The position numbers and the translations under genes were made by a program. Below, piece after piece: positions 7,201 through 64,000 of a DNA stretch of 64,000 bases. Within the stretch, counting starts at the first letter, position 1. Every line of letters starts with the position of its first letter. This DNA comes from Macrostomum lignano (taxonomy: Eukaryota): assembly GCA_002269645.1 (NCBI GenBank), contig NIVC01000127.1, positions 605,626 to 669,625 on the forward strand, written 5' to 3'. The notes beneath the pieces were generated by a model, which saw only the letters and a list, made by a program, of their open reading frames with translations, was not told the DNA's origin and made no database searches.

Positions 7201-10200
7201 ATCGGGCTTTCCCGACCGAAGTGAGTGAGTGACAGAATGGCTGGCATCGCTAGGTATATAATTCATGCAAGTTATTCAAGTTAGCTACAGTTTCAAACAA
7301 GTTACCTGCTGGCATGACCGCGTTGATTTTAGCAGTAAAAATCGATCAAATTATCCCCCAATTTTCAGCCAATTTTCTAATACTGCGACGTCAAATTCTA
7401 AAATTAAGTTTTATAGTCGCTAGACTAGATTAATCGGCTAAATTAATTTGGTCTGGCTTGGCATCGCAGCATTCTAAACTGATTGAAGAAAGAGGCTTGC
7501 AGTGTACTGTCAGTGTCCCGGCTGTTATGAATCTGAAATTCACGCGGGCGGCGCCCTCAGCGGGTGGTGAAGCCGCGGAGCAGCCTCTCGCGGAAGCTGC
7601 CCAGCCGCCGGTAGGCTCTCTGGCAGCAGCCGTGCGGCCAGGGCAGCCGAAACTCGCACGGCAGCCGGCCCGGCACGCCGGCCTCGAAGAATTCGAATGC
7701 GCGATACCACCAGACCTGGGCGAGGTGGCTGCTCCGCCGTTCCGCAGCGGGGCACCTGGCCAAGGCGTGGTACACGAGGAACAGGCGGCTGGCCAGCCAG
7801 TAGCCGATGATCAGGTCCACCGTGTAGTGGGCGTGCGAGGACAGCAGCAGCATGAAGCTGATCAGACAGGTGATGAGGCTCGCCCAGCGAAGCGGACTGG
7901 CTGACGCAGGAGTATACTCCCTGATGGTCAGGTAGGACAGGGTGAGGCTGGCCGTGTGCCCCGAAAAGATGGAGTCGCCGCAGATGTTGTGCGTGTTGCT
8001 AACCGAGAAGCCGGCGCCCATGGCTATGCGGCTAACTCGGCCGTAGATCTCGGCGAAGTTCAGGCTGGAGTTGGAGCGCGGCCCGCAGTGCCGTCGGGCG
8101 TTCGGGTCGGGCATGGCGGTCACGGCGATGGTCACGGAGCGATAGAGGAACACAATGGCCAGTATGAAGCCGGTCCTGCGCAGCAGCACCCAACGGTGTC
8201 TGTGGGCCAAGCACAGGGCCAGCGCGGTGCTCATGTTCAATAGTAGCAGGGCCTCGCAGGCCATCAGGGCCCAGTCGCTGCGCGGCACAAGTCTGAGGCT
8301 GACGTCCGGCAGCGGCGGGTACTCGGGCACGTAGTCGTGCACGTACGCCAGGCTGATGGCGGTCAGCAGCATGCCGCCGCCCATGCATGCCAGGGCTAGC
8401 AGGGTTTTCCAGCATGCAGTCGGCACTGCAACGCTTCCTGCAACACTGCTGCCGCTGCCGCCGCCAGCGCTGCCGCCGACGCCGCTTCGTTCGTTGATTT
8501 CAATTTCAGCGTCACCAACGGCTGCCGTCTCCGGGATGCTGCAGTCGCCACCCTGTTGCGGCATCAGCTGATGCTGCTGGTGACTGTGCGGCGGACAATC
8601 CGGGTCAGCGAACTCCAGGCGGCGTCGCGGCATGTCCGCGCTGATCCGGTGATCCACTGAGGAATCCATGGTGTCGAGAAATTGATTACCCGTCTGTTGA
8701 TTCTGAGTTTCCGAGGTAGCGAAGAAAAACAGCCAACTCTCTTCAGTGGTCAGAATTTTCAAACGAAATTGAGAGGTTTTGCGAGTTGGAGCAACTTTAG
8801 CTAAAGATCCAAGTGAGAGAGTGGGTTTCAGCCATAGACAATTGATTGGTTCAACTATATCGATGTCGATCTTGTTGTTTACTAAAATATGTTTGATTCA
8901 TTGGACTTCACGAACTTCTGCATGCTGAATTTAACCTTCAAAATGCAACTTTGTTTTACTTGGATCATCGAGCCTAAAGCTAAAGTGAATACGCATTCTT
9001 CATACGCTGATTTTCAGGCCAGGCTATTTGGTGGTACCGGCGTCTCTGGTCTGGTACACGCCGCCAGAGATTCTCACTCAGCTGGCGGACAAAACGTCTT
9101 CTATTCCTGATTCGGCATTCACTACAGCGTCCGATGTGTTTGCATTTAGGTAGGCGGGTGAGGCTTTTGGATGGGCCAGGTGCGGGAGTGAGGTGGCTGC
9201 AAGAGTTCAAAGGGGAGAGAGAGGCGAGAGGCGGGGAGTGAGGTGGCTGCAAGAGTTTAAAGGGGGGAGGCGGGGAGTGAGGTGGCTGCAAAACTTGGAA
9301 AGTGACCTTAAAGGAAGGTATCTCAGGTTTCTCTTTAACTTTAATATGTATATGTATATAGCCAGCTATCGACTTGCTATTTGATTCGGGCCTGGCTATC
9401 TAACAAGTAGATAGGGGCTGTTATCCATGGAGACGCAAATGCAAGCCACTACCTCTCTTCTCGCCCCAGCGTGATCATGTACGAGGTGTGCGCCGGCCGC
9501 TATCCGTACGCCAAATGCGACAGGCGCCAGTACATGGAGAATGTCTGCCAAGGCAGGCGCGACACAGTGCAGGATATCCGGGTGTCGGACATCATTAAGG
9601 TGAGGCTGCTCAGTGTGCTTATAGTTAAAAACGACTAGTCGTTCTTAGTAATAGGTTAGTTGTTTGTAGTGACATTAAATACTTCGACCCTGAATCCACC
9701 AAAAAAAACTGCAAAACTCGCGCAGAACCTCATCACGGAATGCTGGAGCCATGACCCTCTGTACAGGCCGGAGTTCAGCCAAATCAATGCAGCGCTGCAT
9801 AATCGGGTAAGTGCGTGTGTTCTGGAAATTTCTGAAGTTTATTTTTACAAACCAAAAAATAGTCTATGGTAATGGGTGGGGGCCGTAGCCCAGTGGTCTA
9901 GCGGGGCGCTTTTTTGTGCCAGCGGCCCAGGCTCGATTCCAAGTGCAGTCACATTAATTTGGGGCTAAATTGGAATCTCGTCTTGGCTCTGCTCGTGCAA
10001 TTAACGCCCTTGAGGGCCAACCTCCCAGGCACAGTGAAGTGTACAAGACTAACGATAAATGGAGCTAGGGTCGCTGTACATTCCCGTGTGTGTGCCTGTG
10101 CGTTTGACTGCGTATGTATCCGCGCACTTGTGTGCCTGCTCAGGGGAGTCGGCGGAATGGGCAGTAATGCCTCTCGCCGGTTGTGTGACAATGTCGCTTA

Positions 10201-37717: not shown

Positions 37718-40700
37718 ATGAGTCATCAACGCCTGATCCAAGCGCTGGTATTCGCAGCTCTGGTCGCGCTGCTAGTCTGCCAGACCGAGGCTGATCCGGC
37801 CAAGAAGTGAGCAGGGAATTGGGGCAGAGGGCGGCTGCGGGGTGAGTGATTGGCATGGGGAAGGGAGGGGGTGGCTGGGGTGAGTGTTTGGCATGGGGAA
37901 GGGAGGGGTGGCTGGGGTGAGTGTTTGGCATGGGGAAGGGAGGGGGTGGCTGGGGTGAGTGTTTGGCATGGGGAAGGGAGGGGTGGCTGGGGTGAGTGTT
38001 TGGCATGGGGAAGGGAGGGGTGGCTGGGGTGAGTATTTGGCATGGGGAAGGGAGGGGTGGCTGGGGTGAGTGTTTGGCATGGGGAAGGGAGGGGTGGCTG
38101 GGGTGAGTGTTTGGCATTGGGAAGGGAGGGGTCGCTGGGGTGAGTGTTTGGCATGGGGAAGGGAGGGGTGGCTGGGTGAGTGTTTGGCACGGGGAAGGGA
38201 GGGGTGGCTGGGGTGAGTGTTTGGCATGGGGAAGGGAGGGGTGGCTGGGTGAGTGTTTGGCATGGGGAAGGGAGGGGTGGCTGGCCAGGCTGGGGTGAGT
38301 GTTTGGCATGGGGAAGGGAGGGGTGGCTGGGGTGAGTGTTTGGCATGGGGAAGGGAGGGGGTGGCTGGGTGAGTGTTTGGCATGGGGAAGGGAGGGGTGG
38401 CTGGGGTGAGTGTTTGGCATGGGGAAGGGAGGGGTGGCTGGGTGAGTGTTTGGCATGGGGAAGGGAGGGGTGGCTGGCCAGGCTGGGGTGAGTGTTTGGC
38501 ATGGGGAAGGGAGGGGTGGCTGGGGTGAGTGTTTGGCATGGGGAAGGGAGGGGGTGGCTGGGGTGAGTGTTTGGCAAAGGAAGGGAGGGGGTGATTTGCA
38601 TTCGTGTTGATTCTCAGAAATTATAGATTATAACTACTCGTATGTGCTTTCAATAAGTTCACAATGTTCGTTCGCGAGTGAATCATTCTAAATAAAGGCT
38701 TTCAGTGACCAAAAAAGTTTTTAGTGCTTTCGCCGGTTCAGAAATTTCTCTTTATCACTGGCTGTTTGCGGAGCATCCGGGCTTTCAAGTCATAGAGTCG
38801 GATTCCCCAGCTGAAGTGGAATAGCTGGCTGGGCGCACGCAAGGCCCCGGTAAAAGTTCACGCTGGCATCAGGTCCTGAGCTTCTTGGAGAAAAATTCCT
38901 TAAAGTTTTCAAAAAAATCCCTGCTATTTAATCAAACCAGTTTTGCTCCATTGTTACTAATTCCTATTTCTTATGCATTTGTTGTATATTTTTTTCGATT
39001 TGATTGCTAGCAAGTTAAGCATAGTTGGCAGCGGTTAGCAGCCCTGACTAGATAAAGCTGAGAGCTCAAGCTCATCCCCTGCTGGCAGCACTGCACAAGA
39101 AGCACAACCATCGGATCTGCTGGCTTTGCTAGTATACTCTGCAATATTGCATGTATTTATCAATAATTCAATTCAAGCATATTGCACATCCGCCCCCATT
39201 TTCAGAAGCGCCTCGCAACACGCCGCGCAGAGGGCCAAGTAAGCGGAGCAGTTCTGTTGCAAGAAACCCAATTAGCAAAAATTTAGGCTTTAAGATTTTC
39301 AAATGTTAAAAAATTGAGCATAGCGAATTTGATATTGTTGGATTGGAAAGCATTTTAGCTAAGATAGGGGGCGGGAAGGCAGATTCATTTCAACGGCTTG
39401 ATTGAGAATTTGATAGTCCTGAAACAGCTTGGAATTGCCTCCCCCAAAGCAAGAAGGAAATGGATGTGAAAACTGTTTACAGTCCGCTGTAAGGTGTAAA
39501 AATGTATATAAAATCCCTATATTAAAAAACATTCCACAGGCGATTCTCGGCTCCACGGGCGTTCGACTGGAAAAAGTGAGCGCTTTCAGTGCCTCGAAGT
39601 TCGTTTATTGAGAACTCAAAAAAGGAGGAACTGAGCTTTGAAATCGGGCGGATGTTGGGGGACTGGGGAAAGACAGGGTGAAAACAGCAACTCATCCGCC
39701 CGGGAGCTTAGTTGAAGAGGGGCGTGACGCCAGCCACACAATGCAACTCCTGCCCCATTGCTTTTGTAGGAAGCGCTTCTCCGCTCCCCAGGCCTTTGAC
39801 TGGCGGTAAGGCAACGGTGACTTCAGCCTGTTCCAGTTGCTCAGTTTCAATTGAGTCCCGTGCTCAACTGCTCAGTCGCTAACTGGCGCGACCAATTATC
39901 GATTTTGTTTTGTCTTAAAGATTAGCAGTGTAAAAGTGCAAGTTGATAGATTAATAAAGTGAATTACTATTCTAGCCTACACGGATAAAGGATAGAATGG
40001 ATTGCTAATCTAGCCTACACGGATAAAGGATAGAATGGATTGCTAATCTAGCCTACATGGATAAAGGATAAAATGGATTGCTAATCTAGCCTACACAGAT
40101 AAAGGATAAAATGGATTGCTAATCTAGCCTACACAGATAAAGGATAAAATGGATTGCTAATCTAGCCTACACAGATAAAGGAGTAGAATGGATTGCTAAT
40201 CTAGCCTACATGGATAAAGGAGTAGAATGGATTGCTAATCTAGCCTACATGGATAAAGGAGTAGAATGGATTGCTAATCTAGCCTACACGGATAAAGGAG
40301 TAGAATGGATTGCTAATCTAGCCAACACGGATAAAGTATAGAATGGATTGCTAATCTAAACTAGACGGATAAAGGAGTAGAATGGATTGCTAATCTAGCC
40401 TACACAGATAAAGGAGTAGAATGGATTGCTAATCTAGCCTACACAGATAAAGGATAGAATGGATTGCTAATCTAGCCTACACAGATAAAGGATAGAATGG
40501 ATTGCTAATCTAGCCTACACAGATAAAGGATAGAATGGATTGCTAATCTAGCCTACACAGATAAAGGATAGAATGGATTGCTAATCTAGCCTACACGGAT
40601 AAAGGAGTAGAATGGATTGCTAATCTAGCCTACACGGATAAAGGAGTAGAATGGATTGCTAATCTAGCCTACACGGATAAAGGAGTAAAATGGATTGCTA

Positions 40701-43700
40701 ATCTAGCCTACACGGATAAAGGAGTAGAATGGATTGCTAATCTAGCCTACACAGATAAAGGATAGAATGGATTGCTAATCTAGCCTACACGGATAAAGAA
40801 TTGAATGGATTGCTAATCTAGCCTACATGGATAAAGGAATAGAATGGATTGCTAATCTAGCCTACACGGATAAAGGATAGAATGGATTGCTAATCGAGCT
40901 TACATGGATAAAGGAGTAGAATGGATTGCTAATCTAGCCTACACAGATAAAGGAGTAGAATGGATTGCTAATCTAGCCTACACGGATAAAGGATAGAATG
41001 GATTGCTAATCGAGCTTACATGGATAAAGGAGTAGAATGGATTGCTAATCTAGCCTACACGGATAAAGGAGTAGAATGGATTGCTAATCTAGCCTACACG
41101 GATAAAGAATTGAATGGATTGCTAATCTAGCCTACATGGATAAAGGAATAGAATGGATTGCTAATCTAGCCTACATGGATAAAGGAGTAGAATGGATTGC
41201 TAATCTAGCCTACACGGATAAAGGATAGAATGGATTGCTAATCTAGCCTACATGGATAAAGGAGTAGAATGGATTGCTAATCTAGCCTACACGGATAAAG
41301 GATAGAATGGATTGCTAATCGAGCTTACATGGATAAAGGATAGACTGGATTGCTAATCTAGCCTACACAGATAAAGGATAGACTGGATTGCTAATCTAGC
41401 CTACACGGATAAAGGATAGAATGGATTGCTAATCTAGCCTACATGGATAAAGGATAGAATGGATTGCTAATCTAGCCTACACGGATAAAGAATTGAATGG
41501 ATTGCTAATATAGCCTATATGGATAAAGGAGTAGAATGGATTGCTAATCTAGCCTACATGGATAAAGGATAGAATGGATTGCTAATCTAGCCTACATGGA
41601 TAAAGGATAGAATGGATTGCTAATCTAGCCTACACGGATAAAGAATTGAATGGATTGCTAATATAGCCTATATGGATAAAGGAGTAGAATGGATTGCTAA
41701 TCTAGCCTACATGGATAAAGGAGTAGAATGAATTGCTAATCTAGCCTACATGGATAAAGGAGTAGAATGAATTGCTAATCTACCCTACATGGATAAAGGA
41801 GTAGAATGAATAGCTAATCTACCCTACATGGATAAAGGAGTAGAATGGATTGCTAATCTAGCCTACATGGATAAAGGAGTAGAATGAATAGCTAATCTAC
41901 CCTACATGGATAAAGGAGTAGAATGGATTGCTAATCTAGCCTACAAAGGCCGTGAGTGGGGTTTTGCCGAAAGGAATTTAGAATAGACAGTAGTTCAAAA
42001 GCAGACCTAAAGAAGAATTCAGCCTCCCAGCACCTCACACTGGCACTGCCTCTCTGCACCCTGCAGCAAGCGGTTCTCCGCTCCCCAGGCGTTCGACTGG
42101 AAGTTAGTCCCTTCACACTGCTCTGGGGCTTCGCCCTGATGCTTGGCAACTAAACAGCAATGCCAATTTAACTTTCTTCTCTTTTTCTCTTTTTGTCATC
42201 TAGGAAGCGATTCTCGGCCCCTCAGGCGTTCGACTGGAGGTGAGTAACACGCTTTCCAGATGCGGTGAAAATCTGCTTGATTGCTTGCAGAACTCAATGC
42301 TGCCTTTGTTATTGCCTCGGTTTTGTCGCATTTTCAGGAAGCGGTTCTCCGCTCCACAGGCATTCGACTGGAGGTGAGTTGGCTCGCTAATTAATGAATA
42401 GGTGCAAATATAATTATAGAATCAGTAGTAAGCCATGCCTTGAATAAAACACTCTGATATACTTTTTTTTAATATTTTAGAAAGCGATTCTCCGCTCCGC
42501 AGGCTTTTGACTGGAGGTGAGTTTGGCCAGTTCATGGACTACTGAACTGCTGCCGCTTGTTGAACTCTTTGGCTAGAATAGAAATAGCACCCGGGATAGT
42601 ACCAGGGACAGCACCAGGGACAACACCGGGGGCAGCACCAGGGACAATACCGGGGACAGCAACCGGAATAGTACCAGGGACAGCACCAGGGACAACACCG
42701 GGGGCAGCACCAGGGACAACACCAGGGACAGCACCAGGGACAATACCGAGGACAGCAGAGGGAGCAACACGGGGGGCAACACCGGGGACAACATCAGGGA
42801 CAACACCGGGGACAACACCAGGGACAACACCGGGGACAACACCGGGAATAACACCGGGGACAGCACCGGGGATAACACCGGGGACAACACTAGGGACAAA
42901 ACCAGTGACAACACCGGGGACAACACCAGGACAACACCGGGGACAACACCGGGACAACACCAGGAGAACACCAGGGACAACACCGGGGATAACACCGGGG
43001 AAAGCATGGGAGCAACAACGGGGACAGCATGGGGAAAACACCGGGGACAGCATGGGGATTACACTGGGGACAGCACCAGGGACAACACCAGGGACAGCAC
43101 CAGGGACAGCATCGAGGCTAGAAGTAGGAATAGCACCGGGGACAGCAGTGGAAGATATTTCTGCAGCAATGCAGAAAGAAAAAAGCAGATAGGTCATAAC
43201 TTCTTGAGAGTTCATGACCCCAGGGTCCATCACTTAATAAGCGTCACAGCGGCCATTACGAGTAATCTGCATCCATCATCTCATATCAATAAATTTCCCC
43301 ACTTAATTTCAGGAAGCGGTTCTCCGCTCCTCAAGCATTCGACTGGAAGTGAGTCCCAGCTTATAACTGCAATTGTGATGCGCATTTTTAATAAATTATG
43401 CATTGCAATTAAGCAATTATAATTCCCTATACAAATTCTAATTATAGGAAGCGGTTCTCTGCTCCCCAGGCCTACGATTGGAAGTGAGTAGTTTAAAAAA
43501 TATTTTTATCTTACTTTTATGTTGCTAATTACCAGAAACAAGACAGAATAATGGGTAAAAGGCGAGAGTAATTATCCGTATCTGTTACTAGTTAAATGCT
43601 TCGCCGCCTGATTAGTCTTTCTAATTTGAAATTTTTAGAAAGCGCTTCAGTGCCCCGATGGCGTACGACTGGAAGAAGTGAGTTTGATAATTTGTAAGAC

Positions 43701-44792
43701 AGATTCTGCAACACAGGGGCCAAAAAATATGGGGTGAATTCATTCTCTGCGATTTTTTTCACAATATGTGAATTCTAAAGCTTGGTAAATTCTGATACAT
43801 TACAGTAACTGGTTTTGAAGTTATGAGGGAAACAGCAAGGGGCCATGAAGTCATAAAGTAAAAGCATGAGGTCATGAGATACGAGCAGGAGGTCATGAGG
43901 TAGGAGTATGAGGTCATGAGGTTGGAGTATGACTTCATGATGTAGGAGTATGAAGTCATGAGGTAGGAGTATGACTTCATGATGTAGGAGTATGACTTCA
44001 TGATGTAGGAGTATGACTTCATGATGTAGGAGTATGAGGTCATGAGGTAGGAGTATGACTTCATGATGTAGGAGTATGACTTCATGATGTAGGAGTATGA
44101 CTTCATGATGTAGGAGTATGAGGTCATGAGGTCATGAGGTAGAATTATGATTTCATTATGTAGGAGTATGAGGTCATGAGCTAAGAGCATGAGGTCATAA
44201 AGCTAGGAACATGAGGTCAGAATGGGAGACGTCATGCTGATGTGTATTACACTCATCTATAAGCCAGAGCGCGACTCATCAATTGCGTCTTTTTTCAATT
44301 CTGTGGCAACGAGTGCACCATATTTGGCTAATGCGCGCACTGCATTAGAAAGTTAAGCGCTGCAAATGCGGAGTCCCAGTCAGCTCAAGGAAGACTTTTT
44401 ATCGTTTTCTTTTTCATTCAGATCGCTGAATGAATTTTAGTCACGCCCCAGTCACAGAGCGGCCCTGCTGTCGGGATTAATTCAATTGCTTTCGGCTTCA
44501 TCGAGTTTATCTGGCTTCATTTAGCCAGATCGAGTTTATTTGGTCTATTTTAGAATATTAAAGACTGAATAGACAGATAATTTTAGTCTGCAATTAATCT
44601 TGCGTTGAGAATTAACTTCTATGATTTGCTGCCGGCACGGCAAGGTTAAGCAAATTCGGCAGCGGTTAGCAACAAGCTGCTGTACAGGCAACGCGTCCGG
44701 GTACCCCGGGTTCGATTCCTATCCGAAGCATCAAATATCCCACTAAATTCCCGCCCCTCTCCAGGCGCAGGGCTGACGCTGATGAAGAGTGA
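37718..44792 (+). CDS. Neuropeptide-type prohormone, 158 aa, with nine FSAPxA(F/Y)DW copies; exons 37718-37806, 39206-39238, 39540-39575, 39770-39805, 42067-42102, 42204-42239, 42338-42373, 42481-42516, 43313-43348, 43448-43483, 43639-43677, 44765-44792
   Basis: Signal peptide MSHQRLIQALVFAALVALLVCQTEA. Every micro-exon is flanked by a pyrimidine tract plus AG and by GT(G/A/T)AG, and all are phase 2. Spliced product: ...DPAKKSASQHAAQRA-KR-FSAPRAFDW-KKKR-(FSAPQAFDW-[K/R]KR)x6-FSAPQAYDW-KKR-FSAPMAYDW-KKRR-ADADEE*. The first and last small exons are the least certain. Confidence 0.88.
37840..38595. repeat. 37-38 bp G-rich minisatellite (GGGGTGAGTGTTTGGCATGGGGAAGGGAGGGGTGGCT), ~20 copies, in the intron after the signal-peptide exon
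   Basis: Direct periodicity. Confidence 0.95.
39970..41945. repeat. 38-39 bp minisatellite (GATAGAATGGATTGCTAATCTAGCCTACACGGATAAAG), ~50 copies, intronic
   Basis: Units at 39971, 40009 and so on; lies between micro-exons 39770-39805 and 42067-42102. Confidence 0.96.
42560..43150. repeat. Degenerate 12-bp repeat (ACC(A/G)GGGACA(A/G)C), intronic
   Basis: Direct observation within intron 42517-43312; the source of the spurious PGTT/PGVV ORFs. Confidence 0.9.
43850..44215. repeat. 21-bp repeat (GTAGGAGTATGACTTCATGAT)
   Basis: Direct periodicity. Confidence 0.9.
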
Positions 44793-45204
44793 GCAGCCAG
44801 GAGCTGAAAGCCGAGGACAAACGGATGGCCTGGATGACGCCAGCAACATTAACATTGGACCGGACCATCAGACGCATGTCAGAGATGATAAAAAATATTT
44901 TAAGAATCAGCCCACTTATATTAATCTCACTTTTGTTCCAAGCGCTTTGAATGTCCTTCGCGAACTAAGTGTAAACCCCCAGCAGTAACCACAGTTACAC
45001 CTGCCATCAAGTGTCCGCAACAATTCCACAGAGAAATAAAGCTTAACAACTCATTGACAAGCAGCGGAAAGCCGTCACTGCCGCAAAAATACGGAGTCTT
45101 ATTAAATATAAAACAATATCTATATAATTATTGTTCAATGTTGACTTTTCTGCCAAAGCAGTACTAAAGGTTTGAGTGAGGAGTCTGAAGAGTCATCTCG
45201 GGGA

Positions 45205-47847: not shown

Positions 47848-49216
47848 TCAGCGCGCAGTCGTGCACTCGCGCGCCCAGCCGGCGCACAGATCGGCCATTT
47901 CAACTGAATGCTCCAGCACGAAGGCGTGGGCAACGTCGCCTTCGTCTAGTCTGGCGTCGACCTCCGGGCAGCTTCGACGCATGTCAGCGAAGTATTCGGT
48001 GGGACACCAGTGATCGTCAGTGCCGTAGTACAGCAGGATCCGCTGGCTGTGCTGCCTGATGGTGGCCAAGTCCGGCTGGCGGACGTCCTGCATCTCCGTG
48101 TGCGCCATGTACAGCACGTTGCCAAGGACGCTAGGCGATAGCAACAGGCGCTCAGTGGCCGCCACGGCGCCCGGGTTGGCGTTAGAATGGCCAACTGCGC
48201 TGAGACAGCGCGCGGCGAAGCCCCGGCGCCAGGCCAGAGGAATCAGCAGAGACAGCAGGGCGACCAGCGCCATGGCCAGCCAGCGGAGCGGCGCCAGCGA
48301 CAGCAGCGGAGCGACGATGCGGCCCTGCGGCGATTCGCGCATCCGCTCGATGGTGGGGAACAGCAGCAGGCAGCGGGCCACCCTGTCGGTGCCGCGGGCT
48401 TGGCGACGAAGCAGCTCCAGGATCATCTGGCACCCGATTGAGTGCCCGATCAGTACCATGTTGGCCTGCAATGCCGTGCATCAGACACTGGGGCTCCTGA
48501 AGTATGGAGATCTGGGATACTGGGGCTCCTGAAGTATGGGGATCTGGGACACTGGGGCTCCTGAAGTATGGGGATCTGGGACACTGGGGCTCCTGAAGTA
48601 TGGGGAGCTGGGAGACTGGGGCTCCTGAAGTATGGGGATCTGGGAGACTGGGGCTCCTGAAGTATGGGGATCTGGGAGACTGGGGCTCCTGAAGTATGGG
48701 GATCTGGGAGACCAGGGCTCCTGAAGTATGGAGATCTGGGAGACCAGGGCTCCTGAAGTATGGGGATCTGGGATACTGAGCTTCCTGTAACATGGGGATT
48801 TGGGAGTCTGTGGAGATTTTCAAAGCCAGTCATTTGGGGTTGAGAAAGTCCACTGAGAAAACCGAGTGATTACATACAAAATAACTTGGATAGCAGATCA
48901 AAGTGAGGCTAAAACGTCTTACATCTTCAGGCAGAGCAGTTTCCAGGAATTTTACTTTGTGTTCAACTTGCTCAGCAAGAGAAAACTTCTTGCTAGAATT
49001 GAAGGAGTTTCCATGGCCACGATGGCTCAGAGCCCAGACATGGACTTGGCCATCTAGTTTTGTCCAGAGAGAGTGCATGAATTCTTCATAGTAACCCACT
49101 ATTCCTGGATTTCCTGGAATCACAATGGCATACCAGTTGCTATCTAGAGCATCCAACTTATATAAAGAGGCCTCTGACTCAAGATGCCTCATTTTAGGTG
49201 AAACTTCAGGTGGCAT
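47848..49216 (-). CDS. LDAH: Lipid droplet-associated hydrolase (alpha/beta hydrolase), ~303 aa; exons 49216-48923, 48465-47848
   Basis: IPGNPG..YY.EF motif, SHRGH, FSLAEQVEHKV.F, nucleophile GHSIG and LLFPTIERMRESPQG; phase-0 GT-AG intron. Confidence 0.92.
48485..48800. repeat. 32-bp intronic minisatellite (GGGGCTCCTGAAGTATGGGGATCTGGGAGACT), ~10 copies
   Basis: Direct periodicity in the LDAH intron. Confidence 0.94.
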
Positions 49217-55645: not shown

Positions 55646-56109
55646 CATTTTTAATGAAAGTACTTTTTGTAAGCGTTGCAAATGAATTGAAAGATTTTCA
55701 AACTTCAGAGATGCAACGTCGCCCTTCTTCTTGAGCAGTTTAAAACATTTTTAACCGTTCAAACAGAATTAAGTGAATTTTGTTAAAATATTTCGAAGTA
55801 CTGCTTGCTCCTCCTTAACTTTGTGTTTATATTTTTTGCTCGAATTCCGAAATGTTTATTTATTAATAGTACATTCTTCCCATATTGGTAGTTTTGTTTT
55901 TACTTTAATAATTTTTAAATACTTCGTTATTTCGTCAAGCTTAGTTAATTTATTCACAAGAGTAGTCGATGCTAAAGAGTAGTTAGAAGCGAGTTTTGCT
56001 AGTAAAATGGTTTTCCAAAAGTCTATTTACAGGACATATTATTAGGCGCTTTAATGAAGTTCCATGCCAAAAAAACTTGCATCTCGACCGCTCCGCAGCC
56101 CCTGGCAAG

Positions 56110-57390
56110 ATGGCCACCACCCGGCCCAAGCCCATCACTGGCACCTTCTACCCGGACGCGTACACCTTCGGCTGGGGCGACATCCTCGGGCCCAGCGCCA
56201 CCCTGGAGGACCTCATGGCTCAGCTGGACGCTGGCGCTGGCGGAGGAGGAGGCGGCCGCGGGCGGGACGCCCGCCGCGAAGGCAGCCGGACATCTACGGA
56301 GTCGCTGACCTCCATTCTGTATCACGACAGCTTCGATGAGGACGAGTTGTCTACAGACTCCGAAGAACCGGCGGCAGTGGCGGCTGCTGCTGCGGCAAGT
56401 GACGGCGAAGGCGACAGACCGGCAGCGGCGACGGCGATGGCAAGGATGTCCGGACGGCCGCGGCTGAAGCCGGCGCTGCCCGACGAGGCTGTCCGGCCGC
56501 AGGAGGTGGCGCAGCGGCTCAACGGGGGAAGCACTGACGAAATCGCCACCGCCTCCACCAGACGGAAGGTGGCGCGCCGGAACTTGTCGCCTCCAGCCTC
56601 CAACCGGTCCGTCACTACGACGGCATCGGCGGCATCGGCGGCCTCGTCGCGAAAGCAGCCGCCTCGACAGCGGCGTCGAGTCGCGTCGGCTTCGACGGCG
56701 GACTCCGAGGATCGGCGCAGCTCCGCCTCGGGCGCGGCTGCGTCATCGACTGTCTCAGCCGCCGCCTCCGCCTCGGCTGCGGCTTCCGTCAATGCAGGCG
56801 GCACTCGCGAACGCACCTGGGAGGCCTGGTTCCTGGCAAAGGAGCGCCGGCTTCGAGAGCAGCGCCGTCGAGAGGCAGAGCAGCAGGAGAAGGCCAAGGC
56901 GGAGAAGGCGTCCAAGAAGGCCGCCGTTGATGCGGCCATCAAGCGCTGGCTGGCCAAGAAGCGGCAGCAGCAGCAGCAGCAGCACGAGGAGGAACAGCGG
57001 AAAAAGGCGGAAGAGGAGGCGAAGGCGGAAGAGAAGGAGAAGGAGAAGGAGGCGATCAAGGCCAAGGCCAAGGTGGAGTTCGCCAAGTGGCGCAGCGCCT
57101 ACGAAGAGAAGCGCCGAGCCGAGCTGCAGAAGGCCAAGCAGGAGGCGGAGGCGGCGGAGGCGCACAAGCTGGAGGTGAAGCGGAAGTCGGAGGCGGCATT
57201 CGCCAAGTGGGTGGAGGCGCACAAAAATGTGCGGCCGCACGCGCCCTACAGCTACGGGTACACGGACGGCCGGCTCATGAGCTACTACGACAAGAACAGC
57301 AACCCGCCGCCGAGCTTTGTCGTTGCCGAGCCCTGGCTGCCGCCGACAGAGACTGTCAAGCGAGAGCGATCGCCCGCTTCTAAGAACTAA
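56110..57390 (+). CDS. CCDC34: Coiled-coil domain-containing protein 34-like, single exon, 426 aa
   Basis: WEAWFLAKERR, repeated xxWxx helices in a K/E-rich coil, and the C-terminal YGYTDGRLMSYY...PPPSF...PW match CCDC34/DUF4207. ATG in good context at 56110. Confidence 0.85.
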   Translation: MATTRPKPITGTFYPDAYTFGWGDILGPSATLEDLMAQLDAGAGGGGGGRGRDARREGSRTSTESLTSILYHDSFDEDELSTDSEEPAAVAAAAAASDGEGDRPAAATAMARMSGRPRLKPALPDEAVRPQEVAQRLNGGSTDEIATASTRRKVARRNLSPPASNRSVTTTASAASAASSRKQPPRQRRRVASASTADSEDRRSSASGAAASSTVSAAASASAAASVNAGGTRERTWEAWFLAKERRLREQRRREAEQQEKAKAEKASKKAAVDAAIKRWLAKKRQQQQQQHEEEQRKKAEEEAKAEEKEKEKEAIKAKAKVEFAKWRSAYEEKRRAELQKAKQEAEAAEAHKLEVKRKSEAAFAKWVEAHKNVRPHAPYSYGYTDGRLMSYYDKNSNPPPSFVVAEPWLPPTETVKRERSPASKN

Positions 57391-63209: not shown

Positions 63210-64000
63210 TCATCGTCTCCGCAGGTCCAGCCTTATGATCCGCAGGAAGGCCTTCTTGAACTGCGCATTGGCTAGCGCGTAGCAGAACGGATTGATGGGG
63301 CTGTTGAGGTAGCACAGCCAGTAGCCCAGGTTGAACAGGTGCTTATTGAGGCACTGAGCCTGGCAGATGCTGCGGATCAGGATGAAGATGTGATAGGGCG
63401 TCCAGCAGACCACGAAGGCGCCAAGGATCAGCGTGATGGTCTTCAGCGCCTTCCGGGCCCGATTCTCCGTGCGCGACTGCTTCTTCTTCTGCCGGTCCTG
63501 CCGTTTCGTCCGCACCCGACTGCGCAGCCGCCTCGTAGCGTCCCGGAACGACTGGGCGAGCGTCGGCAGGTGCAGCTGCTTCCGCCGCTCCTCGGCGCCA
63601 CACTGGATCACTTCGATCTCGTCGTCGCCGACTGTCTGCGTCGACTGCTGCGCCGTTCGTCGCACCGGCTGCGGCAGCGGCAGCTCCACCACTGAGGTGA
63701 CCACGCGGTCCCGTTCGCCGGAGTTCAAGTCAACGCGGGTCTGCACGGCGGCCGCTTCGGCCGCGGCGGCCAGCTCGTCCTCATAAGATGGCCGCCGCTT
63801 CCAAATCGGAGAGCCGGGCCTGGCCGAGCGGTCATTGACGAGGATCTGGCTGTGCTTGGGCAGCAGTTCGATGAGCAGCCGCATGGAGTCGATGGATGGA
63901 TTCGACCGGATGCTCTCCTCGTCGATATAACGGAGGCCTTCAAACTCGTCCGACGGAGCGCACAAGGAGAACTGCAGAGTCTTCAGCTGCTGCTGCTGCT
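63210..64000 (-). CDS. Muscarinic acetylcholine receptor (invertebrate B-type/GAR-like), 3' part only (ICL3, TM6, TM7, C-terminus)
   Basis: ENRARKALKTITLILGAFVVCWTPYHI...YWLCYLNSPINPFCYALANAQFKKAFLRI; the frame is open to the window edge. Confidence 0.9.
   Translation of the reverse strand, partial: QQQQLKTLQFSLCAPSDEFEGLRYIDEESIRSNPSIDSMRLLIELLPKHSQILVNDRSARPGSPIWKRRPSYEDELAAAAEAAAVQTRVDLNSGERDRVVTSVVELPLPQPVRRTAQQSTQTVGDDEIEVIQCGAEERRKQLHLPTLAQSFRDATRRLRSRVRTKRQDRQKKKQSRTENRARKALKTITLILGAFVVCWTPYHIFILIRSICQAQCLNKHLFNLGYWLCYLNSPINPFCYALANAQFKKAFLRIIRLDLRRR

What the first reader, a model, noticed from the sequence alone, without database searches (positions are those of the whole stretch)
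39540..43677. Symmetric phase-2 cassette design: splice junctions build the basic cleavage residue, and synonymous sites are scrambled
All peptide exons are multiples of 3 and phase 2-2, so any subset can be skipped or duplicated in frame. Each junction codon in the chain is Lys or Arg (AA|G, CG|C, AG|G, AG|A, AA|A), making the first residue of a tribasic site. Codons vary freely between copies (TCC/TCG/TCT/AGT, GCT/GCC, CAG/CAA, TTC/TTT) and the ~100-nt introns are unrelated, yet the peptide is nearly invariant. This points to old exon duplications held under purifying selection rather than a DNA satellite. Exons cluster at ~135-145 bp spacing (42067, 42204, 42338, 42481; 43313, 43448), with variant peptides at the ends of the array. 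Inference: alternative splicing could tune peptide dose or the mix of variants.
Basis: partly seen in the sequence, partly recalled or inferred. Interest (0 to 1): 0.72.

Follow-up and report, generated by a model that had tools for sequence, protein, structure and literature searches.

The report
Micro-exon peptide precursor gene in flatworm
This is a real gene of the flatworm Macrostomum lignano that makes nine copies of a short secreted peptide, each on its own tiny exon with introns splitting the cleavage-site codons; the layout is unusual, but it is a variant of known gene designs.

Summary
The window is Macrostomum lignano DNA (contig NIVC01000127.1). It holds a 12-exon gene on the + strand with a 477-nt coding sequence of 158 aa, spanning 37718-44792. 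The exons are a signal-peptide exon, a 33-nt exon, nine peptide exons (eight of 36 nt, one of 39 nt) and a short acidic tail exon. All 11 introns are phase 2, and every split codon reads Lys or Arg. The protein is therefore a chain of FSAPQAFDW-type nonapeptides separated by KKR/RKR sites.

The exon copies are near saturation at synonymous sites (pS 0.64) but almost invariant in protein (pN 0.064, ratio about 0.05). The short introns share no similarity. Three genomic copies of the locus keep the same exon order. They differ by 0.8% in exons and 4.8% in introns, so the exon duplications long predate the recent genome doubling.

Two paralogous genes in the same genome are intronless, with nearly identical 36-nt DNA repeats.

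Regulated exon skipping is untested. The only hint is that the RNA-based annotation gives 158 aa at two copies and 146 aa at the window copy, which equals one 36-nt exon fewer. That annotation also miscounts repeats elsewhere.

This is a new variant of known kinds: multi-copy prohormones, schistosome micro-exon genes and beetle Capa genes.

The parts
37718..37806 (+). Exon 1: ATG plus signal peptide (MSHQRLIQALVFAALVALLVCQTEA|DPAK), ending AA|gtgagc in phase 2
   Evidence: Sequence read. The spliced translation gives a 158-aa ORF. There is a hydrophobic core at residues 6-17, with mean Kyte-Doolittle values of 2.3-3.1. The same N-terminus appears in the public model P0004.
39206..39238 (+). 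33-nt phase 2-2 exon encoding SASQHAAQRA. It carries no peptide copy, and both of its junction codons are Lys.
   Evidence: Good acceptor (ccccattttcag) and donor (gtaagc). Including it gives exactly the 158 residues annotated at the two other copies of the locus. It shows no detectable similarity to the peptide exons (below 22 of 36).
39540..39575 (+). Peptide exon A (RFSAPRAFDWK). Both of its splice sites lie 3 nt downstream of their positions in the other copies, so its length stays 36 nt.
39770..39805 (+). Peptide exon B (KRFSAPQAFDW), ending CG|gtaagg
39963..41945 (.). 39-bp satellite (about 51 copies) that fills most of the 2261-nt intron between exons B and C
   Evidence: The intron is longer in copy L005, where exon B does not appear within 3.2 kb of exon C.
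42067..42102 (+). Peptide exon C (KRFSAPQAFDW). It is the only exon starting with C. Its donor is GTTAGT in this copy and GTAAGT in the two other copies.
42204..42239 (+). Peptide exon D (KRFSAPQAFDW)
42338..42373 (+). Peptide exon E (KRFSAPQAFDW). Copy L003 has CAG>CAT (Gln>His) here, and L005 has a synonymous GAC>GAT.
42481..42516 (+). Peptide exon F (KRFSAPQAFDW)
42586..43111 (.). 12-bp minisatellite inside the 796-nt intron between exons F and G. Its length varies between the genomic copies.
   Evidence: The F-G exon spacing is 832 nt in the window, 658 in L003 and 872 in L005.
43313..43348 (+). Peptide exon G (KRFSAPQAFDW, with CAA for Gln)
43448..43483 (+). Peptide exon H (KRFSAPQAYDW)
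43639..43677 (+). Peptide exon I, 39 nt (KRFSAPMAYDWK, with Ser coded by AGT)
44765..44792 (+). Coding part of the terminal exon. Its first base G completes the split Lys codon; the exon then reads CGC AGG GCT GAC GCT GAT GAA GAG TGA (RRADADEE, stop).
   Evidence: The annotated CDS end in L004 (14443) maps to window 44792. The public model P0001 reads this exon in the wrong frame.
45035..45040 (+). AATAAA, the probable polyadenylation signal, 243 nt after the stop codon
   Evidence: its function is inferred.

Best explanation
This is a lineage-restricted secreted-peptide precursor gene of Macrostomum lignano, most likely a neuropeptide or peptide-hormone gene, built as a micro-exon gene.

How the product is made (inferred): the 158-aa product has a signal peptide. 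It would be cut by a prohormone convertase after each KKR/RKR site and trimmed by a carboxypeptidase. That yields nine unamidated nonapeptides: six FSAPQAFDW and one each of FSAPRAFDW, FSAPQAYDW and FSAPMAYDW.

What is shown: each peptide with its cleavage site is one 36-nt (or 39-nt) exon. The introns sit after the second base of the first basic codon. The only bases used around that junction are AA, AG or CG before it and G, A or C after it.

Origin (inferred): Lys and Arg codons such as AG|G and AA|G also fit the exon side of the splice-site consensus, so one short sequence serves both splicing and cleavage. The array most likely arose by ancient tandem duplication of an exon-plus-intron unit. 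Since then the introns and synonymous sites have drifted to saturation while selection held the peptide. Because every intron is phase 2, loss or gain of an exon stays in frame and nearly always rebuilds a basic residue. I regard that as a tolerated by-product of the duplication history, not a demonstrated regulatory device. The main transcript includes all the exons.
For: Organism and locus:
- The only protein relatives are M. lignano entries.
- The window is identical to NIVC01000127.1 across the two aligned stretches, 531 and 451 nt.

Gene model:
- The spliced ORF is 477 nt, or 158 aa, with all 11 introns in phase 2 and bounded by GT-AG.
- The RNA-seq-based annotation (method in PMC5730564) gives 158-aa products at the two other copies of the locus. 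Its CDS end coincides with my predicted stop codon.

Precursor features:
- A hydrophobic N-terminus.
- Tribasic sites between all copies, with no spacer sequence.
- Two paralogues (P0002, P0003) keep the same plan: a signal peptide, then [KR]KR-F..P..YDW repeats, then a short acidic tail.

Selection:
- Between the exon copies pS is 0.64 and pN 0.064 (ratio about 0.05). There are 4 amino-acid changes against 23 expected.
- Between the genomic copies of the locus, divergence is 0.8% in exons and 4.8% in introns (Fisher p = 0.002).

Age:
- The introns are unalignable with each other, yet each is 95% conserved between the genomic copies.

Cassette property:
- 63 of 66 forward exon joins give Lys or Arg.
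Against: - No expression pattern, peptide detection or receptor is known.
- The peptides lack a C-terminal Gly for amidation and match no described neuropeptide family, so 'neuropeptide' is an inference from precursor design alone.
- The annotated proteins of this gene are not in the searchable databases. The match to the annotation therefore rests on product length and CDS end, not on sequence.
- I did not run a formal signal-peptide predictor.
- The direction of change, whether introns were gained here or lost in the paralogues, is unresolved.
Confidence: 0.78

Rival explanations
1. One reading: the symmetric phase-2 cassettes exist so that regulated exon skipping can tune the number or mix of peptides per precursor.
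For: All introns are phase 2, and 63 of 66 exon joins keep a basic residue. The RNA-based annotation gives 146 aa at the window copy against 158 aa at the two other copies. Under the cassette model, 146 has only one solution: the 33-nt exon is kept and one 36-nt exon is lost. Exon C has a weak GTTAGT donor only in the window copy. Schistosome micro-exon genes and beetle Capa genes use exactly this property for exon skipping (PMC4015677; PMC6585902).
Against: No isoform has been seen directly. The same annotation reports 4 repeats where the genome has 8 in both intronless paralogues, so repeat-related mapping artefacts are common. Six of the nine peptides are identical, which limits what skipping could achieve. 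The paralogues deliver eight copies from a single exon without any such device. Splice sites are generally strong (7 of 9 peptide-exon donors are GTGAGT), as expected for constitutive exons.
Confidence: 0.2
2. Origin by intron gain: the ancestral gene was an intronless tandem-repeat gene like the two paralogues. An intron entered one repeat at the AG|G site and the unit was then duplicated, or introns entered several repeats independently.
For: Both paralogues are single-exon genes, and they carry TGG AGG AAG or TGG AAG AAG (an AG|G or AA|G site) at the homologous position. No poly(A) remnant follows either paralogue, as a retrocopy might leave.
Against: Eleven same-phase introns, including the one after the signal peptide and those around the non-repeat 33-nt exon, are more simply explained by an old intron-rich gene. 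In that case the paralogues, which lack every intron including the signal-peptide one, would be processed retrocopies that later homogenised their repeats. No intron shows residual similarity to the repeat unit.
Confidence: 0.3
3. The product is not processed into peptides but acts as an intact, secreted, basic repetitive protein, for example a structural or adhesive one.
For: No peptide has been detected. M. lignano secretes many repetitive proteins (my own knowledge, not tested here).
Against: The conserved unit is exactly the stretch between tribasic sites, with no spacer, in three paralogous genes that have otherwise unrelated signal peptides and tails. That is the signature of a processed polyprotein.
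Confidence: 0.05
4. The array is a non-coding DNA repeat or a chance pattern.
For: The window is full of minisatellites.
Against: Variation is concentrated at synonymous sites. Canonical splice sites flank every copy. Tandem Repeats Finder reports none of the exon clusters as a tandem array. RNA-based gene models cover the locus.
Confidence: 0.01

Closest known systems
Schistosome micro-exon genes (MEGs; e.g. MEG-4 / 10-3 antigen with tandemly repeated 27-bp exons)
   Same: Both occur in flatworms. Both have a first exon that carries the signal peptide and internal exons of about 36 bp or less that are symmetric and make up about 75% of the coding sequence (75.5% here). In both, exons can be dropped in frame, and the products are small secreted proteins (PMC4015677; PMC4671649).
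   Different: There is no sequence relationship. MEG products are not chains of identical peptides flanked by convertase sites. MEGs are tied to parasitism and host exposure, whereas this gene is in a free-living macrostomorph. Exon skipping is not demonstrated here. One exon is 39 nt.
Beetle periviscerokinin (Capa) genes with amplified peptide exons
   Same: Both are neuropeptide precursors in which internal exons each encode one peptide and all introns share one phase. Exons can therefore be duplicated or alternatively spliced without a frameshift. Both have a signal peptide in the first exon and an acidic tail in the last (PMC6585902).
   Different: The beetle genes use phase 1 rather than phase 2, and have one to four such exons rather than nine. 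Their exons are larger, and their introns do not split the cleavage-site codon. The peptides are unrelated (PRXamide type).
Ordinary multi-copy neuropeptide precursors encoded in one exon, including this gene's own paralogues P0002 (8 x FSAPGTYDW) and P0003 (FAQAGTYDW + 7 x FVQPGTYDW)
   Same: All share the plan of a signal peptide, tandem identical peptides separated by basic sites, and a short tail. The paralogues share the F..P..(F/Y)DW motif, the KKR/RKR spacers and the 36-nt period.
   Different: The paralogues have no introns, and their DNA repeats are nearly identical (four identical 36-mers in L001). They therefore evolve as a DNA tandem repeat. The window gene's copies are separated by introns and are saturated at synonymous sites.
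NPY/NPF genes with a conserved phase-2 intron in an Arg codon next to the processing site
   Same: Both have a phase-2 intron splitting an Arg codon at the end of the peptide-coding stretch. This feature is conserved in flatworms and other bilaterians (PMC2953531; PMC6585902).
   Different: NPY/NPF genes have a single intron and a single peptide, and the split Arg belongs to the mature RF/RY-amide rather than to the cleavage site. There is no sequence similarity.
Xenopus caerulein precursor genes (small peptide exons, variable copy number in mRNAs)
   Same: One short exon per peptide copy, and mRNAs that differ in the number of copies. This comes from my own memory of the 1980s literature and was not checked here.
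   Different: These are vertebrate skin-secretion peptides, and their exon size and phase differ. I could not verify the details with the library available.

Membership tests
Multi-copy secreted peptide (prohormone-type) precursor | N-terminal signal peptide | tested here: met
   Residues 6-17 form a hydrophobic core with mean Kyte-Doolittle values of 2.3-3.1. Small residues sit at -3 and -1 (T..A) before DPAKK. This was judged by inspection; no dedicated predictor was run.
Multi-copy secreted peptide (prohormone-type) precursor | Repeated conserved peptides bounded by di- or tribasic convertase sites | tested here: met
   Nine copies are each bounded by a basic site: KKR or RKR at most boundaries, KKKR after the first copy and KKRR after the last. 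The peptide is conserved with a dN/dS ratio of about 0.05.
Multi-copy secreted peptide (prohormone-type) precursor | Mature peptides detected, or expression in neurons or secretory cells | not testable with these tools
   No expression or peptidomic data were available. No paper in the library mentions the peptide.
Described neuropeptide families (flatworm npp/spp genes, bilaterian families) | Sequence similarity of the mature peptide or precursor to a named family | tested here: not met
   Word-indexed searches and an exhaustive HMMER search find only M. lignano entries, all without a functional name. The remaining hits are unrelated repeats. Koziol et al. 2016 on flatworm neuropeptides is not in the library.
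Micro-exon gene (schistosome MEG-type architecture) | Most of the coding sequence (about 75%) lies in micro-exons of 36 bp or less | tested here: met
   360 of 477 coding nt (75.5%) lie in ten internal exons of 33, 36 (eight exons) and 39 nt. One exon exceeds 36 nt by 3 nt.
Micro-exon gene (schistosome MEG-type architecture) | Micro-exons are symmetric (length a multiple of 3, same phase at both ends), with the signal peptide in the flanking first exon | tested here: met
   All ten internal exons are phase 2-2, and exon 1 carries the signal peptide.
Micro-exon gene (schistosome MEG-type architecture) | Exon-skipping isoforms observed | tested here: inconclusive
   Annotated products are 158, 158 and 146 aa at the three copies of the locus. 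The annotation is known to miscount repeats.
Micro-exon gene (schistosome MEG-type architecture) | Homology to a schistosome MEG family | tested here: not met
   No hit outside M. lignano. The resemblance is architectural only.
Same-phase peptide-exon amplification (beetle Capa-type) | Each internal exon encodes one peptide plus its cleavage site, and all flanking introns share one phase | tested here: met
   the phase is 2 here, against 1 in beetles.
Same-phase peptide-exon amplification (beetle Capa-type) | PRXamide-type peptide / orthology to Capa | tested here: not met
   The peptides are FSAPQAFDW-type, with no Gly for amidation and no PRX motif.

The most novel reading that the evidence does not exclude
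Placing every repeat on its own micro-exon may have 'frozen' the array. On this reading, introns insulate the copies from the slippage and unequal crossing-over that homogenise the intronless paralogues. Each copy could then drift and be tuned separately, and exon skipping (such as the 146-aa form at the copy with the GTTAGT donor) could be used to set peptide dose. It would also mean that MEG-type architecture for secreted products existed in free-living flatworms before parasitism.
Probability: 0.2. Interest if true: 0.7.

Novelty: new variant of a known kind. Interest (0 to 1): 0.5.

Why it matters
One genome holds the same peptide family in two architectures. In one, nine intron-separated micro-exons have scrambled synonymous sites. 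In the other, single-exon genes have near-identical DNA repeats. That makes a natural comparison for two questions: how introns affect concerted evolution of tandem repeats, and whether intron-per-repeat arrays arise by unit duplication, intron gain or retrocopying.

The gene also extends the micro-exon layout, so far discussed mainly for parasite-host interaction genes of schistosomes, to a prohormone-like gene in a free-living model flatworm that can be manipulated with transgenesis and RNAi.

On the practical side, it gives a candidate new flatworm signalling peptide with predicted masses for peptidomics. It also shows that the public UniProt models of this gene (A0A1I8HD77 'Coat protein' and A0A1I8IJ07) are wrong.

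Tried and rejected
- Literature search for the peptide string found no papers.
- Two word-indexed protein searches with the spliced product returned only P0001 and P0002. The NCBI 158-aa and 146-aa proteins of this gene are not in the searchable database, so I could not see which exon the 146-aa model lacks.
- No contig is on record for P0001 or P0004.
- I tested whether the 33-nt exon or any intron holds a decayed peptide exon. Nothing reaches 22 of 36 matches apart from the nine exons and two background hits elsewhere in the window.
- I tested for residual intron-intron similarity and found none.
- Rfam and tRNA scans of the locus found nothing.
- I looked for retrocopy hallmarks (poly(A) tracts) after the intronless paralogues and saw none, which is uninformative for old copies.
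- DeMarco 2010 and Berriman 2009 on MEGs, and Koziol 2016 on flatworm neuropeptides, are not held in the library. I took the MEG definitions from secondary sources.
- I first placed exon 1 and the 33-nt exon 2 nt too far right. This was corrected.

Full report
**What is there.** A six-frame motif search finds nine copies of [KR]RFSAPxAxDW, all on the + strand. Each copy sits in a 36-nt block (the last is 39 nt). Each block follows a pyrimidine tract plus AG and is followed by GTGAGT (7 of 9), GTAAGG or GTTAGT. A scan with the 36-nt consensus finds no other copy on either strand: background matches reach at most 22 of 36, while real copies score 25-34 of 36. Tandem Repeats Finder does not report the exon clusters as a tandem array, although the window is full of minisatellites.

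**Whole gene.** Upstream, an ATG at 37718 opens a typical signal peptide (MSHQRLIQALVFAALVALLVCQTEA|DPAK). This exon also ends in phase 2 (AA|gtgagc, ending at 37806). A 33-nt exon at 39206-39238 (SASQHAAQRA) is phase 2-2 as well. Downstream, the exon starting at 44765 completes the last split Lys codon and then reads RRADADEE-stop, ending at 44792. An AATAAA lies at 45035. Spliced together, the 12 exons give a 477-nt ORF of 158 aa:

MSHQRLIQALVFAALVALLVCQTEADPAKKSASQHAAQRAKRFSAPRAFDWKKKRFSAPQAFDWRKRFSAPQAFDWKKRFSAPQAFDWRKRFSAPQAFDWRKRFSAPQAFDWRKRFSAPQAFDWKKRFSAPQAYDWKKRFSAPMAYDWKKRRADADEE

All 11 introns are phase 2. Ten internal exons of 33-39 nt hold 75.5% of the coding sequence.

**Organism and independent support for the model.**
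- The only protein relatives are Macrostomum lignano entries.
- Using the neighbouring LDAH gene as a handle, I fetched three M. lignano loci from assembly GCA_002269645.1.
- L004 (NIVC01000127.1) is identical to the window across the two aligned stretches (531 and 451 nt). L003 and L005 are 97-98% identical copies with the same order of exons C to I. Multiple copies are expected, because M. lignano is a hidden tetraploid with a redundant assembly (PMC5704211 abstract; PMC5730564).
- The NCBI annotation is built from RNA-seq (StringTie/TACO/TransDecoder). It calls a minus-strand gene next to LDAH in each locus, with products of 158 aa (L003), 158 aa (L005) and 146 aa (L004).
- The CDS end in L004 maps exactly to my predicted stop at 44792. 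The value of 158 aa equals my model including the 33-nt exon. So the gene is expressed, and the full-length splice pattern is supported, though only through product length and CDS end.
- The UniProt models are faulty. A0A1I8HD77 ('Coat protein') shifts frame in exon H and reads the terminal exon in the wrong frame. A0A1I8IJ07 fuses upstream genes and retains intron C.

**Selection and age.**
- Aligned on the ten codons RFSAPxAxDW, the nine copies have pS 0.64 (Jukes-Cantor dS about 1.4) and pN 0.064, a ratio of about 0.05.
- The six exons encoding the identical peptide have pS 0.58 and pN 0.
- The 33 nucleotide differences from consensus cause 4 amino-acid changes, against 23.2 expected and a minimum of 15 in 20,000 random placements.
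- One Ser is coded by AGT against TCN elsewhere.
- The six short introns (98-194 nt) show no pairwise similarity above shuffles.
- Between the three genomic copies of the locus, the same introns are 95% identical. Exons differ by 0.8% and introns by 4.8% (Fisher p = 0.002).
- The exon duplications are therefore far older than the genome doubling, and the peptide is constrained on both timescales. The claim of 'old duplicates under purifying selection, not a satellite' stands.

**Cassette property.** Of the 66 possible forward exon-exon joins, 63 give Lys or Arg. The three exceptions join an AA-ending exon to exon C, which starts with C and gives AAC (Asn). The bases that encode the split residue (AA, AG or CG before the intron and G, A or C after it) also fit the exon side of the splice consensus. 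So the cleavage residue and the splice-site context share the same bases. The sequence shows this coincidence directly; that it explains the intron position is my inference.

**Paralogues.** M. lignano has at least two further genes of this peptide family:
- P0002, at L001 10001-10402, encodes 8 x FSAPGTYDW.
- P0003, at L002 8001-8423, encodes FAQAGTYDW plus 7 x FVQPGTYDW.

Both have a signal peptide, KKR/RKR spacers, a 36-nt period and a short acidic tail. Both are single-exon genes whose repeats are nearly identical at the DNA level. The same peptide family therefore exists in one genome as a homogenised DNA tandem repeat and as an intron-separated, synonymously scrambled exon array. Which state is ancestral is open. 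The paralogues lack every intron, which fits processed retrocopies, but no retrocopy hallmarks remain.

**Alternative splicing.** This is not demonstrated. The 146-aa product at the window copy equals the 158-aa model minus exactly one 36-nt exon. That is the only solution under the cassette model. Exon C carries a weak GTTAGT donor only in this copy, against GTAAGT in both other copies, which makes it the obvious candidate. There are two cautions. First, the same annotation gives 4 repeats where the genome has 8 in both intronless paralogues, so repeat-induced artefacts occur. Second, the other two copies have their own weakened donor (GTGCGT after exon H) yet are annotated as full length.

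**Comparison with known systems.**
- The gene works like an ordinary multi-copy prohormone.
- Its architecture matches the structural definition of schistosome micro-exon genes: a signal-peptide exon followed by symmetric micro-exons making up about 75% of the coding sequence. There is no homology to them.
- It parallels beetle Capa genes, where same-phase peptide exons are amplified and alternatively spliced.
- It recalls the phase-2 intron in an Arg codon of NPY/NPF genes.
- No paper in the library links micro-exon genes with Macrostomum.
- I rate it a new variant of known kinds: real, tidy and useful as a natural experiment, but not a new principle.

**Context.** The neighbouring genes are LDAH (47.8-48.5 kb, - strand), CCDC34 (56.0-57.4 kb, + strand), a PAP2-family gene (7.6-8.8 kb, - strand) and a rhodopsin-type GPCR fragment at the window end.

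Noticed in passing
window 39963-41945; 42586-43111; 43863-44219; also 1-678: Three introns of the peptide gene are inflated by minisatellites with periods of 39 bp, 12 bp and 21/42 bp. The 12-bp array changes the F-G exon spacing between the genomic copies (832, 658 and 872 nt). The 39-bp satellite shares a core (AGAATGGATTGCTAATCTA) with a 41-bp satellite at the window start.
   Followed up: partly
window 39015-39060 and 44640-44720: Two related fragments share GGCAGCGGTTAGCA, and the second also has a GGTTCGATTCC box. They look like tRNA-derived SINE remnants, in the second and the last intron of the gene. ARAGORN and Rfam call nothing there.
   Followed up: partly
window 63210-63965 (- strand): An ORF with a rhodopsin-family GPCR C-terminal half (Pfam 7tm_1, E = 4e-20) lies about 18 kb downstream of the peptide gene. 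I did not test any link to the peptide.
   Followed up: no
L001 10001-10402 and L002 8001-8423: The NCBI protein models of the two intronless paralogues (85 and 92 aa) contain 4 peptide repeats, whereas the genomic ORFs contain 8. The RNA-based annotation has removed 144 nt of tandem repeat as a spurious intron or collapsed transcript.
   Followed up: partly
window 42067-42108 vs L003/L005; window 43484-43489 vs L003/L005: The genomic copies differ in their splice donors. After exon C the donor is GTTAGT in the window and GTAAGT in the other two copies. After exon H it is GTGAGT in the window and GTGCGT in the other two.
   Followed up: partly
window 13900-44900 (as seen through P0004): UniProt A0A1I8IJ07 (1378 aa, 'ANK_REP_REGION domain-containing protein') is a chimeric model. 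It strings together ORFs from roughly 14 kb to 32 kb of this locus and then the peptide gene, so public models of the region are unreliable.
   Followed up: partly
window 7557-8762 (-), 47848-48471 (-), 55996-57390 (+): The neighbouring genes are a PAP2-family (sphingomyelin-synthase-like) ORF, a lipid-droplet-associated hydrolase and a CCDC34 homologue. The order LDAH then peptide gene is conserved at all three copies of the locus.
   Followed up: partly
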